Positions 40,929-43,177 of a DNA stretch of 64,000 nt are shown piece by piece. Both the position numbers and the translations under genes were made by a program. Where the stretch lies: positions 49,265,626-49,329,625 of the forward strand of contig CM074516.1 of the NCBI GenBank assembly GCA_037379345.1. Direction: 5' to 3'. A model generated the notes under the pieces. That model did not search any database. It saw only the letters and a program-made list of their open reading frames with translations, and had not been told where the DNA came from. The DNA is from Perna viridis. Its lineage: Eukaryota. Positions within the stretch are counted from its first letter, which is position 1, and every line of letters starts with the position of its first letter.

Positions 40929-42536
40929 TGAAGAGGAGTCGAACGCACCCAAGATGTCAGACGTGTTTTGTTACAGTGTTCTTAATGTTTGTGGAATTAG
41001 TTAGATTATCAGTTTTGGAATGGATTTTCCAGCCGAAATATAGTGATATGATGGACATAGTTACACAAGTAGTAAGTTTCAGTTGACAAAATACGTATTT
41101 ATATACAATTGACATTATCGTGATAGCTTCTGCCGTTTTTGATTTGAGGGTCTTGTGGAAAATTGATTTATGAATTCAATGTTGAGAGATTAATTTATGT
41201 GAAAATGGATTGTCTACCGAAAACATTAACTTCTTTGTTGAAAATTGTAAATGAACAATATACTGATTTTAGCTGGACATCTACTGAACAAAATGGAAGA
41301 ATGAAAATATCTTTATTGTGGACAAATGGTGATAAATCAACGAAACGGAAATCTAATGCATCTAGAAAACGTGACCGGAAACGACTGAAGCAATTTGTAG
41401 AAAAGAAAAATTCAGAAAATAAAACATCTGAAAGCGAAGATGAATCGTTTATTGAAAGTGATACAGAAAGTGATATTCCATCTGAACCCACCGATGCGTT
41501 AATGGACGTGATCGACAGTGTTCCGTGTAGCGCCTCATTGACGGTAAATACTAACAAAGGAAAGCAGTCAAGTGAAGAGAATAACCAATTGCGAACCGAG
41601 AGTGTGAAACATGTTAACGGAAATTTAAATGCCGCAGGGAAAATATGTATAAGTGAACATTCGAATACACAGAATATGTTAACTAAATCTCATGACGTTG
41701 TGAATACAGAAAATATTTCGAACACTGAAGAGAAATCAAAATCTCGACAGACACCAGTTCTAGATAAAATTGTTATCAAAACTTCGTTGAGTATGTGTAG
41801 CGCAACACTATTAACGTTGATCCCAATGATTAATTTAATCATGTCCTACTCATTGGGAAAGGAAGAGGACATTCATTATTTCGGTCCAGGAACAAAGCGG
41901 TACACGTACGCTTTGCACAATATTGAAAACGATTTTGATGATGTTAGGAAAACTAAATACATGAATAGTGATATAGCTAGTGCAATTGAGAAAATGGAAA
42001 TTGTTGCCCGCAGGAAAATAGAGACATGGTTAAACTAGGTCTGATTTGATTTTTAAATTGTATGATAAAGTTTGAATATATGGAAAATGTTTTGAAATAT
42101 TTTTTTTTTACATTTTTTGCATGCCAATGTTTTAAAGCAGTCTGGAATGGATAGCCAGCCGGAATCTTTAATATTTGGATATGAAATTGTGTATTGTATT
42201 TCAATTACCTTTTCACTTGTTTTTACATTTTACCTAAAATTAAAAAAAAAAGAAATAAAAATGTGCATGAATACAGTGAAAGAGTACAACTGTGATATCG
42301 CTTGTGCGTACATGATTGTGAATAAAAATATATTAAATGTATGAATATAAAAATTTTGTAGGTATTGCGAAAATGGACAATTGTGGTGACTTTGTTTTCT
42401 ATGCGTATGTAATTGACATATATGATATAACTAATCAATATGATAATAGTATGTCTATGAGAATTAATAACAATATCTCTTTGATTTGTAAATGTTTTTC
42501 TGTTAATAAAATTTTATCAAGATAAAAAAAAAAAAA
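40929..42536 (+). mobile_element. Non-autonomous protein-coding retroposon N1 (no APE/RT), tRNA-Phe-targeted
   Basis: Interrupts tRNA after nt 61; AATAAA + A13 tail joined to tRNA nt 24; 3'-terminal 32 nt match A2 at 30 positions; single ORF. Confidence 0.88.
41205..42038 (+). CDS. Uncharacterised 277-aa protein of N1 (conserved N- and C-terminal domains, basic NLS-like patch, acidic/Ser-rich linker)
   Basis: First ATG at 41205 (AAAATGG); homologous to N2 ORF: LPKTL..L..IV.EQY..FSW.S.EQNG.M.ISL.WTN and LDKIVIK...NIE.DF.DVR.TK..SDI. Confidence 0.85.
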   Translation: MDCLPKTLTSLLKIVNEQYTDFSWTSTEQNGRMKISLLWTNGDKSTKRKSNASRKRDRKRLKQFVEKKNSENKTSESEDESFIESDTESDIPSEPTDALMDVIDSVPCSASLTVNTNKGKQSSEENNQLRTESVKHVNGNLNAAGKICISEHSNTQNMLTKSHDVVNTENISNTEEKSKSRQTPVLDKIVIKTSLSMCSATLLTLIPMINLIMSYSLGKEEDIHYFGPGTKRYTYALHNIENDFDDVRKTKYMNSDIASAIEKMEIVARRKIETWLN

Positions 42537-43177
42537 GCGTTAGACTGAAGATCTAAAGATCCCGGGTTCCGGCACGGAACAATCCGGCGGCTGGCAGGAT
42601 ATTTTTTGCAACAGATTTTTACATCAGGTGCATAATAGTAACTCGGGCATCTAATTTGCTATACTTAAAACTGCATGTATTCAAGCGCAGAATGAATAAA
42701 CCGTGCATGCACAGATGCCTGTTATATGAACCGCTGTATTATCTCTCTTCAAACAAGTCTGCCCTCAAGTTGTGACATTGACGTTTGTATATAATTCTTT
42801 TTCCCTCCTTTCTGGCGACTGACAATGGAAGAGGTACGACTTAATTTCATAATGATAATACAAGAAAATGGTAAAGTACGTGTAAACATTTTACTAACTA
42901 ATATTCAGCTAGCCAGGGTGCATATATGTGTATGTATCGACCCCAATATACCTTAAATCCTTCTTTCCGACGACATGTTGGTGGTCTTGTACATGTACGG
43001 TATTTTGTTTAGCCAGCATAACCGGTCAAGTACTTGCTTTTCGGCATATTTGAATTGATATCAACAATCAAGAATGATGCAACTTTCGATTTATGAAATC
43101 TGAAAAAGATATTATAGTATAGATCCGATGGTGATGTATATATATAAGTACTCAATTAATCTCGTCAGTCCTTGTCA

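What the first reader, a model, noticed from the sequence alone, without database searches (positions are those of the whole stretch)
42492..42540. N1 mimics the 3' terminus and insertion register of family A2
Seen: N1 ends ATGTTTTTCTGTTAATAAAATTTTATCAAGAT(A)n; A2 (54041-54072) ends ATGTTTTACTGTGAATAAAATTTTATCAAGAT(A)n, 30/32 identical. Only A2 copies and N1 join at tRNA nt 23/24; all others join at nt 21/22. N1 TSD (nt 24-61) resembles the A2 TSD (nt 24-64). Known: SINEs borrow the 3' tails of partner LINEs for RT recognition. Inference: A2 ORF2p mobilised N1.
Basis: partly seen in the sequence, partly recalled or inferred. Interest (0 to 1): 0.85.

Follow-up and report, generated by a model that had tools for sequence, protein, structure and literature searches.

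The report
Gene-carrying retroposon with borrowed LINE tail
N1 is a 1.6-kb jumping element with no copying enzyme of its own that carries an orphan gene and ends in about 55 bases taken from one family of LINE retrotransposons, so it most likely borrows that family's enzymes to insert into tRNA and 5S rRNA genes; this is a known principle in an unusual gene-carrying form.

Summary
N1's last 32 bases are 30/32 identical to A2 copy E9, with no chance matches in shuffles. In this window only N1 and the two A2 copies join tRNA-Phe at nt 23|24.

Genome-wide, N1 is a young family of at least 40 copies and at least 20 independent insertions, all with the same tail. N1 and A2 both hit many tRNA species, a tRNA-like unit in U6 arrays and 5S rRNA genes. 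They share the identical junction in all 8 tRNA species sampled for both.

The "register" is a bias, not a rule.
- In most tRNAs all LINE families use the same junction.
- In five tRNAs with the D-arm motif AGAGC (Phe, Lys, Cys, Tyr, Ala-AGC), counts at 23|24 versus 21|22 are A2 9:3, N1 3:2 and other families 4:27.
- The TSD resemblance is coincidence: N1 TSDs are mostly 8-18 bp.

The tail homology spans about 55 nt and mixes A1-like and A2-like characters. Other N elements end in ATAAAGAT(A)n, so N1 probably replaced its tail.

Verdict: trans-mobilisation by an A-clade LINE, most likely the A2 lineage, is well supported but untested at the bench. Earlier notes of this scan on other DNA of this genome describe the same elements.

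The parts
40929..42535 (+). N1, a non-autonomous poly(A) retroposon (1607 bp) inside a tRNA-Phe gene, in the same sense as the tRNA
   Evidence: Interrupts the 676-bp array unit. At least 40 genomic copies are 97-100% identical. It has no RT or EN domain.
41205..42038 (+). N1 ORF, 277 aa, orphan protein
   Evidence: Homologous to the N2 ORF (32% identity, E 9e-34). Intact in 28 of 29 other copies. A profile search finds 86 related clusters. No Pfam family and no fold match.
42469..42523 (+).
   Evidence: BLASTN: 41 nt at 95% to A2-E9 and 62 nt at 84% to A1. Alignment. 30/32 to A2, 27/32 to A1. Zero chance matches in shuffles.
42524..42535 (+). Poly(A) tail, 12 A
   Evidence: Read directly.
42536..42575 (+). 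Downstream part of the split tRNA-Phe, starting at G24, with an internal 12-nt deletion (nt 45-56)
40868..40928 (+). Upstream part of the split tRNA-Phe (nt 1-61).
48178..54081 (+). A2 copy E9 (L1/Tx1-like LINE): ORF1 48435-49670 (411 aa, against 532 aa in copy E4), ORF2 50037-53939 (1300 aa), tail 54041-54072
54003..54031 (+). 11-bp hairpin in the A2 3' UTR; N1 has no counterpart
   Evidence: Fold of 53989-54079: -20.7 kcal/mol, z -3.55. The matching N1 stretch gives z +0.31.
16515..22414 (+). A2 copy E4, with intact ORF1 (532 aa) and ORF2 (1300 aa); tail 22376-22407 ends AAGA(A)n; joins the tRNA at G24
   Evidence: ORF2 matches human L1 ORF2p at E 2.6e-78.
1694..7583 (+). A1 copy (about 80% identical to A2), tail ending ...AAACTTTTATCAAGAG(A)n; joins the tRNA at G22
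43890..45425 (+). N2, a sister non-autonomous element with a homologous ORF (44140-44964), tail ATATAAAGAT(A)n; joins at G22

Best explanation
N1 is a non-autonomous poly(A) retroposon. It has no reverse transcriptase or endonuclease. It carries its own conserved 277-aa orphan gene, and its last ~55 nt are homologous to the 3' UTR end of the A clade of L1/Tx1-like LINEs that live in this genome's Pol III genes.

Most likely an N element, whose relatives end in ATAAAGAT(A)n, once acquired an A-lineage 3' module. One route would be RT template switching from a LINE RNA to an N RNA. This chimera then amplified.

Its RNA is copied by target-primed reverse transcription by the ORF2 protein of an A-clade LINE, most probably the abundant, intact and equally young A2 lineage. 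That protein nicks the bottom strand of tRNA genes at the end of the D loop or in the D stem (nt 20-24), and of 5S rRNA genes at nt 27.

The exact nick is set by the helper protein plus local sequence. In tRNAs reading ..AGAGC.. there are two adjacent A|G sites. A2 prefers the second one, and N1 inherits that bias.

Shown: the tail homology, the absence of RT and EN, multiple independent insertions with TSDs, the shared targets and the register bias.

Inferred: tail capture, the functional need for the tail, and the identity of the helper.
For: (1) The terminal 32 nt are 30/32 identical to A2-E9, with 0 chance matches. Homology runs 41-62 nt. The same tail is present in all 36 N1 3' ends sampled.

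(2) N1 has no RT or EN. Its only long ORF is unrelated to A2 ORF1.

(3) There are at least 40 copies at 97-100% identity. At least 20 independent insertions have different targets, TSDs and 5' extras. So the tail-bearing RNA is itself the template.

(4) A2 is intact (E4: 532-aa and 1300-aa ORFs). It is the most abundant family (293 first-look candidates, against 129 for A1, 75 for C and 26 for B). Its copies are 98-100% identical, so it was active at the same time as N1.

(5) The first target base is identical for N1 and A2 in all 8 tRNA species sampled for both. Both also sit in 5S rRNA genes (one A2 copy; N1: C1:17787920) and both in the tRNA-like unit of U6 arrays.

(6) Register in Phe, Lys, Cys, Tyr and Ala-AGC (23|24: 21|22): A2 9:3, N1 3:2, others 4:27. 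A2+N1 versus others gives p = 9e-5; N1 versus others p = 0.04; N1 versus A2 p = 0.6.

(7) The bias follows the family, not the last RNA bases. A2-E4 (AAGA(A)n) uses 23|24, while A1 (AAGA(A)n) and C/N2 (..AGAT(A)n) use 21|22 in Phe and Lys.

(8) N2, N3 and the N-like elements in two other assemblies all end ATAAAGAT(A)n. The A-type tail is therefore the derived state in N1.
Against:
- L1-group enzymes can mobilise any polyadenylated RNA, so the tail may not be needed.
- N1 lacks the strong 3' UTR hairpin of A2.
- Over 55-62 nt the tail is as close to A1 as to A2, and it carries an A1-like GTAAAT block that A2 lacks.
- No LINE with N1's exact tail variants was found.
- The most conserved shared block contains AATAAA, so it could be kept for polyadenylation rather than for RT recognition.
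- N1 register counts are small (5 informative events), and array duplication makes some counts non-independent.
- In most tRNAs and in 5S rRNA all families use one junction, so the register cannot discriminate there.
- Only part of the genome-wide copies could be read.
Confidence: 0.6

Rival explanations
1. Any LINE of the Pol III-gene guild (A1, A2, A4, B, C, D) moves N1 through its poly(A) tail alone, as mammalian L1 moves Alu and mRNAs. The A-type tail would be a relic of the template-switch event that created N1, or a captured polyadenylation module. It would not be a recognition signal.
For: - ORF2 is L1-like.
- All families end in poly(A) and use the same sites in most tRNAs and in 5S rRNA.
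- N1 lacks the A2 3' UTR hairpin.
- The conserved shared block includes AATAAA.
- N1 joins at both registers.
Against: - Each co-resident LINE family keeps its own distinct terminal motif.
- Every N subfamily ends in one of those motifs: N1 in the A type, and N2 and N3 in the terminal ATAAAGAT that family C also carries.
- N1's register profile is closer to A2 than to the pooled other families.
Confidence: 0.2
2. The helper is an A-clade LINE other than present-day A2: A1, A4, or an extinct or unsampled A lineage from which the tail was taken.
For: - The tail is a mosaic: GTAAAT and TTTCTGT as in A1, but ATGTTTT, AAAATTTT and AAGAT as in A2.
- 62 nt align to A1, against 41 nt to A2.
- An older N1 copy (94% identity, tail ..ATCAAATAT) joins Phe at 21|22, as A4 does (tail ..ATCAAAAT).
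Against: - The terminal 32 nt and the AAGAT end fit A2 best (30 versus 27 of 32).
- The young N1 copies in Phe and Lys use 23|24, as A2 does. A1 and A4 use 21|22 there.
- A2 is the most abundant intact family.
Confidence: 0.15
3. The N1 copies are not a transposing family. They would be processed copies of a host gene's mRNA, or copies spread only by unequal crossing-over within tRNA arrays.
For: - Several copies within one array share the same TSD and poly(A) length, which fits array duplication (Ile, Pro and some Thr copies).
Against: - No intron-bearing or tail-less parent locus appeared among 42 matches.
- At least 20 different insertion sites lie on nine contigs, in more than 13 kinds of Pol III gene, each with its own TSD and 5' junction.
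- All copies share the same body-to-LINE-tail joint.
Confidence: 0.03

Closest known systems
LINE-SINE pairs that share a 3' tail (stringent recognition; Kajikawa and Okada 2002, as summarised in PMC4494074)
   Same: The non-autonomous element ends in a short sequence homologous to the 3' end of a co-resident LINE, and it shows the LINE's insertion hallmarks (poly(A), TSD, same targets).
   Different: N1 has no Pol III (tRNA, 7SL or 5S) head. It is 1.6 kb long and carries a conserved protein gene. The helper is L1-like with a poly(A) tail, a type usually thought to have relaxed recognition.
SIDEs, the non-autonomous parasites of the site-specific R2 element (PMC3414825)
   Same: Non-autonomous elements that use a site-specific LINE's machinery, share its 3' end and land in exactly the helper's target site inside a multicopy RNA gene.
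   Different: SIDEs are internal-deletion derivatives of the helper and are non-coding. N1 shares only ~55 nt with the helper and has its own unrelated gene and its own 5' end.
Target-specific non-LTR retrotransposons of small RNA genes. Tx1 clade (APE endonuclease): Mutsu in 5S rRNA (PMC5340908) and Dewa in the tRNA-Leu spacer (PMC3706591). NeSL-related elements encoding a restriction-like endonuclease: NeSL-1_TV, LIN15 and LIN25 in single tRNA species (PMC4640811).
   Same: LINEs that live in multicopy Pol III genes, at a fixed position and in a fixed orientation. The helper here carries an APE endonuclease, like the Tx1-clade elements.
   Different: Here one family hits nearly every tRNA species, a tRNA-like unit and 5S rRNA, with no shared local sequence. 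The published cases are sequence-specific for one gene.
Dictyostelium TRE5-A (PMC5391098)
   Same: A LINE guided to tRNA genes and also to 5S rRNA genes, which suggests recognition of the Pol III apparatus rather than of a DNA sequence.
   Different: TRE5-A inserts upstream of the gene. These elements insert inside it, at a near-fixed nucleotide.
HAL1 (half-L1) elements of mammals (recalled from memory, not checked here)
   Same: A protein-coding non-autonomous retroposon that depends on a LINE's ORF2p.
   Different: HAL1 encodes an L1 ORF1p. The N1 protein has no similarity to the helper's ORF1.

Membership tests
Non-autonomous LINE-dependent retroposon that shares its helper's 3' tail | Encodes no reverse transcriptase or endonuclease | tested here: met
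   The only long ORF is 277 aa and has no Pfam domain.
Non-autonomous LINE-dependent retroposon that shares its helper's 3' tail | 3' end homologous to the 3' end of a co-resident autonomous LINE | tested here: met
   30/32 to A2; 41 nt at 95% to A2 and 62 nt at 84% to A1; 0 chance matches.
Non-autonomous LINE-dependent retroposon that shares its helper's 3' tail | Multiple independent insertions with poly(A), TSDs and the helper's target preference | tested here: met
   At least 20 independent events. TSDs are mostly 8-18 bp. The junction matches A2 in 8 of 8 shared tRNA species and in 5S rRNA.
Non-autonomous LINE-dependent retroposon that shares its helper's 3' tail | Mobilisation in trans by the helper's ORF2p, dependent on the tail | not testable with these tools
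   Needs a retrotransposition assay.
SINE in the strict sense | Short element with a 5' head derived from tRNA, 7SL or 5S RNA that carries an internal Pol III promoter | tested here: not met
   ARAGORN finds no tRNA inside N1. N1 is 1607 bp, protein-coding and rich in T runs.
Internal-deletion derivative of the helper (SIDE-like) | Both the 5' and the 3' ends derive from the helper LINE | tested here: not met
   Only the last 41-62 nt match any LINE in the window.
ORF1-only element (HAL1-like) | Its ORF is homologous to the LINE ORF1 | tested here: not met
   BLASTP of the N1 ORF against A2 ORF1 gives a best E of 0.63.
Processed retrogene or pseudogene | A parent gene elsewhere, and copies without a LINE-derived tail | tested here: not met
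   Of the 42 genomic matches, 40 are N1 copies or fragments on the same contigs, and within tens of kb, as the Pol III gene arrays mapped (30 were read; flanks were not read for the other 10). Every one of the 36 N1 3' ends read carries the A-type tail, and 2 short matches are A-type tails alone.
L1 group (L1/Tx1-like) LINE, for the helper A2 | N-terminal APE endonuclease, RT and C-terminal zinc motif in ORF2; a separate ORF1; a poly(A) tail | tested here: met
   Pfam Exo_endo_phos, RVT_1 and zf-RVT. ORF2 residues 19-884 match human L1 ORF2p at E 2.6e-78. ORF1 carries CCHC-type cysteine/histidine motifs.
Tx1 clade specifically | Placement within Tx1 in an RT phylogeny | not tested
   No reference sequences were at hand, so the clade is left as L1/Tx1-like.

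The most novel reading that the evidence does not exclude
N elements are a long-lived, protein-coding lineage of parasites of the LINEs that insert inside Pol III genes of mytilid-like bivalves. They change helper by replacing a ~55-nt 3' module. N1 would be a recent switch from the ancestral ATAAAGAT-type end (the terminal motif of family C) to an A2-lineage end. The two-nucleotide shift of its junction in Phe and Lys genes would then be the footprint of the new helper's endonuclease. The conserved orphan protein would be needed in cis for its RNA to compete for the helper's ORF2p.
Probability: 0.4. Interest if true: 0.65.

Novelty: new variant of a known kind. Interest (0 to 1): 0.5.

Why it matters
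Tail sharing between a LINE and its non-autonomous rider is textbook. Three features here are unusual.
- The rider is a 1.6-kb element with its own conserved orphan gene, not a SINE.
- Its sister elements carry a different LINE-type end, so helper switching by tail replacement can be studied in one genome.
- Several helper families compete for the same nucleotide inside tRNA and 5S rRNA genes, so small shifts in the junction can act as a fingerprint of which enzyme made an insertion.

If confirmed, the system is a natural test of how strictly L1-like reverse transcriptases recognise 3' ends. It could also be a source of enzymes that insert at a defined point in Pol III genes. I found no paper describing such elements in the library searched, though subscription journals are not covered.

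Tried and rejected
No transcript data were obtained.
I did not try another tool to fetch them. I used short junction patterns, whose matched text the tool prints.
- Searches for a LINE carrying N1's own tail variants (CTGTTAAT after the LINE hairpin arm; GTAAATGT after the A-type stretch) found nothing.
- N protein function:
  - No Pfam family, and the ESM Atlas gave at best 0.79.
  - The word-based homologue search found only the protein itself plus one weak hit.
  - The first AF2 model, from 3 sequences, was poor (pLDDT 41). The second, from 31 sequences, was good in both terminal domains (pLDDT 74.5).
  - Foldseek (best E 0.36) and VIA-align (best Z 5.2) gave no credible fold match.
- A common RNA structure in the N1 and A2 tails was rejected. 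A2 has a hairpin (z -3.55) and N1 does not (z +0.31).
- A fixed linear distance from the tRNA 5' end, or from the D-loop GG, does not explain the A2/N1 nick position across tRNAs (hand comparison of the contexts).
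Full report
**Setting.** The window is a tandem array of tRNA-Phe(GAA) genes with a 676-bp unit. ARAGORN finds 29 intact genes. Eleven insertions interrupt it, all inside the tRNA and in the tRNA's sense orientation:
- A1 (1694-7583);
- A2 (16515-22414 and 48178-54081, 99.2% identical to each other);
- B (24539-30188), plus two identical 5'-truncated copies;
- C (54770-60795), plus one truncated copy;
- an A-like hybrid that runs off the window (from 62192);
- two short elements, N1 (40929-42535) and N2 (43890-45425).

A2 encodes an ORF1 with cysteine/histidine motifs and a 1300-aa ORF2. ORF2 has Exo_endo_phos, RVT_1 and zf-RVT domains. Its residues 19-884 match human L1 ORF2p at E 2.6e-78. 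Copy E4 has both ORFs intact.

**Check of the observation.** The N1 32-mer at 42492-42523 matches the A2 tails with 2 mismatches (54041-54072) and 3 mismatches (22376-22407). No match at up to 3 mismatches occurred in 100 shuffles. In the window, poly(A) is followed by G24 of the tRNA in N1 and both A2 copies. It is followed by G22 in the seven other complete insertions. N1's 5' junction lies after nt 61 and that of A2-E9 after nt 64, but A2-E4's lies after about nt 86. The tRNA copy downstream of N1 lacks 12 nt. So the description is correct.

**What N1 is.**
- N1 has no RT or EN. It has one conserved ORF (41205-42038, 277 aa) homologous to the N2 ORF (32% identity, E 9e-34).
- That ORF is unrelated to A2 ORF1.
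- The genome (723 Mb) holds at least 40 copies at 97-100% identity, out of 185 first-look candidates.
- The 30 copies I could read lie in tRNA genes for Pro, Thr, Ile, Arg, Leu, Ser, Glu, Gly, Lys and Phe, and in a tRNA-like Pol III unit inside U6 snRNA arrays. Pattern matches add two copies in tRNA-Ala(AGC) and one in a 5S rRNA gene (C1:17787920).
- Different targets, TSDs (mostly 8-18 bp, with outliers of 30, 38 and 59 bp) and 5' extra bases show at least 20 independent insertions.
- 28 of 29 further copies keep the ORF. Substitutions are half synonymous (50 against 55), although these counts are not independent.
- The protein family has 86 clusters in a 1.8-billion-protein library.
- A 31-sequence AF2 model is confident in an N-terminal domain (1-75) and a C-terminal domain (185-277), but matches no known fold.

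**The tail.**
- All 36 N1 3' ends sampled carry the same end...TTCTGTTAATAAAATTTTATCAAGAT(A)n.
- Homology to A-clade LINEs covers 41 nt at 95% (A2) and 62 nt at 84% (A1).
- In the alignment, N1 has A1-like characters (a GTAAAT block where A2 has a 3-nt gap, and TTTCTGT). It also has A2-like characters (ATGTTTT, AAAATTTT, the AAGAT end).
- Over the last 32 nt the score is 30 for A2, 27 for A1, 14 for B and 15-18 for C.
- No LINE with N1's private variants exists in the assembly by exact pattern.
- A2's strong 3' UTR hairpin (54003-54031, z -3.55) has no counterpart in N1.
- N2, a third subfamily N3 (71-72% identical to N2) and N-like elements in two other assemblies all end in ATAAAGAT(A)n. These are L061, and L064, which joins a tRNA-Gln gene at GGTTA|GCAC.
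- The A-type end of N1 is therefore the derived state, which fits replacement of the 3' module.

- N1 and A2 have the same first target base in all 8 tRNA species sampled for both.
- But in Thr(AGT), Arg(CCT) and Leu(CAG), A2, N1 and the other LINE families found there all use the same junction. In Ile only A2 and N1 were sampled, and in Glu(CTC) N1 and B share the junction while the one A2 copy has an irregular one. At 5S rRNA (..GAAAGCA|CCGG, after nt 27) A1, A2, A4, C, D and N1 all use one site.
- Discrimination is possible only where the D arm reads ..AGAGC..
- In Phe and Lys, elements with the A2/N1 tail join at 23|24: A2 five times and N1 twice. A1, A4, B, B', C and N2 join at 21|22: 12 independent events (13 junctions counted).
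- Exceptions: an older N1 copy (94% identity, tail ..ATCAAATAT) and an A2-like copy ending AAGAG both join this Phe array at 21|22. B' joins Cys at 23|24.
- In Tyr, A2 uses both registers. In Ala(AGC), N1 uses both, A2 uses 21|22, and A1 and A4 each use 23|24 once. In Thr(TGT) and Thr(CGT), A1, C and B' (and A4 in TGT) often use 23|24.
- Pooled over Phe, Lys, Cys, Tyr and Ala(AGC): A2 9:3, N1 3:2, others 4:27. A2+N1 versus others gives p = 9e-5, N1 versus others p = 0.04, and N1 versus A2 p = 0.6.
- The bias does not follow the last RNA bases. A2-E4 and A1 both end AAGA(A)n, and C and N2 end AGAT(A)n as A2 does, yet they differ in register. This points to the protein.

The register is thus a context-dependent preference of the A2 lineage that N1 shares. 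It is not a fixed rule, and it gives modest independent support for A2 as helper.

**Mechanism.** The best reading is trans-mobilisation of N1 RNA by an A-clade ORF2p, most likely of the A2 lineage, after a single capture of an A-lineage 3' module. I put confidence at about 0.6 for the A2 lineage and about 0.8 for the A clade as a whole. Rivals:
- Generic poly(A)-driven mobilisation by any LINE of the guild, with the tail a relic or a polyadenylation module (0.2).
- A different or extinct A-lineage helper (0.15).
- Retrogene copies or array duplication only (0.03), which is contradicted by the many independent sites.

**Comparison with the known.**
- The principle is that of LINE-SINE tail sharing (PMC4494074) and of R2 SIDEs (PMC3414825). 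N1 is neither a SINE (no Pol III head) nor a deletion derivative of its helper, and its gene is not an ORF1.
- Among published LINEs of small RNA genes, the Tx1-clade elements carry an APE endonuclease like the helper here (Mutsu in 5S rRNA, PMC5340908; Dewa in a tRNA-Leu spacer, PMC3706591), while the NeSL-related elements encode a restriction-like endonuclease (single tRNA species, PMC4640811). Each is specific for one sequence.
- The spread here over nearly all tRNAs plus 5S rRNA recalls the Pol III-complex-guided TRE5-A (PMC5391098), except that insertion is inside the gene.
- I found no paper describing this.
- Earlier notes of this scan on other DNA of this genome (s1-753411, s1-755810, s1-766537) describe the same N-type retroposon and the same LINE guild, and they agree with what I found independently. 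What this report adds is the helper assignment, the origin of the tail and the test of the register.

**Limits.**
- Only part of the genome-wide copies could be read.
- Some counts include copies made by array duplication.
- The LINE clade (L1 versus Tx1) was not resolved by a tree.

Noticed in passing
L059:1972-2089 and 2742-2860; genome places C1:17767001-17801253 and C5:40584070-40728048: LINE families A1, A2, A4, C and D (tail AATAAATGAT), and also N1, insert into 5S rRNA genes at one site, after nt 27 (..GAAAGCA|CCGGTTCTCG). This site has no sequence likeness to the tRNA sites. That suggests the position is read from the Pol III apparatus or the transcription start, not from the DNA sequence.
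   Followed up: partly
L006, L013, L004, L008 (genome C2:52.23-52.39 Mb): U6 snRNA tandem arrays (689-bp unit). Each spacer holds a tRNA-like unit with an A-box-like stretch, a B box (GGTTCAAATCT) and a T-run terminator. N1 and A2 insert into it at GGGGAAA|GATG. The U6 genes themselves are not hit in these loci.
   Followed up: partly
L004 and L008, just 5' of the N1 copy: A 38-nt piece of tRNA-Lys(CTT) (nt 14-51), plus 13 further bases, lies between the target duplication and the N1 5' end. This is either 5' transduction from a source copy sitting in a tRNA-Lys gene, or a template switch onto tRNA-Lys.
   Followed up: partly
window 62192-64000 and genome C6:49332697: The last insertion is a hybrid. 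Its first 128 bp are 97% identical to A2, and the rest is about 80%. Its probable 3' end, placed by the expected element length, lies outside the window, ends ..TATCAAAAT(A)n (here called A4) and joins tRNA-Phe at 21|22. Its 5' junction is identical to that of A2-E9.
   Followed up: no
window 8943-10325 and 12361-13744: Two 5'-truncated B copies are 100% identical and lie 3418 bp apart, so a block of the array was duplicated after the insertion.
   Followed up: no
window 1415-1693 / 7584, and 24421-24538 / 30189: Very long target duplications: about 258 bp for A1 and 97 bp for B, against 13 bp for C and N2. Second-strand cleavage is loosely placed.
   Followed up: no
L064:2773-4320 (NCBI GCA_900618805.1, contig UYJE01006869.1) and L061:2748-4229 (ENA ERZ26273167): N-like elements in other assemblies have the same conserved 5' motif (..GTCGAGTGCACC) and the tail AATAAAGAT(A)n. 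One joins a tRNA-Gln gene at the same D-arm site. The other lies in a non-tRNA repeat with a 14-bp TSD. From memory, the NCBI accession is a Mytilus assembly (not checked).
   Followed up: partly
genome C39:12228-13394 and C8:217454-218614: Two matches at 91-92% identity cover only N2 positions 203-1374 (the ORF and part of the 3' UTR) and lack N2's ends. They could be another N subfamily with different ends, or a host-gene-like copy. I could not fetch them.
   Followed up: no
window 48435-49670 versus 16771-18369: ORF1 of A2 copy E9 is 411 aa, against 532 aa in copy E4. A gap of about 370 bp then separates it from ORF2, so E9 is probably defective while E4 looks intact.
   Followed up: no
window 42558-42559: The tRNA-Phe copy downstream of N1 has lost 12 nt (tRNA nt 45-56), so the N1 target duplication is imperfect.
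   Followed up: no
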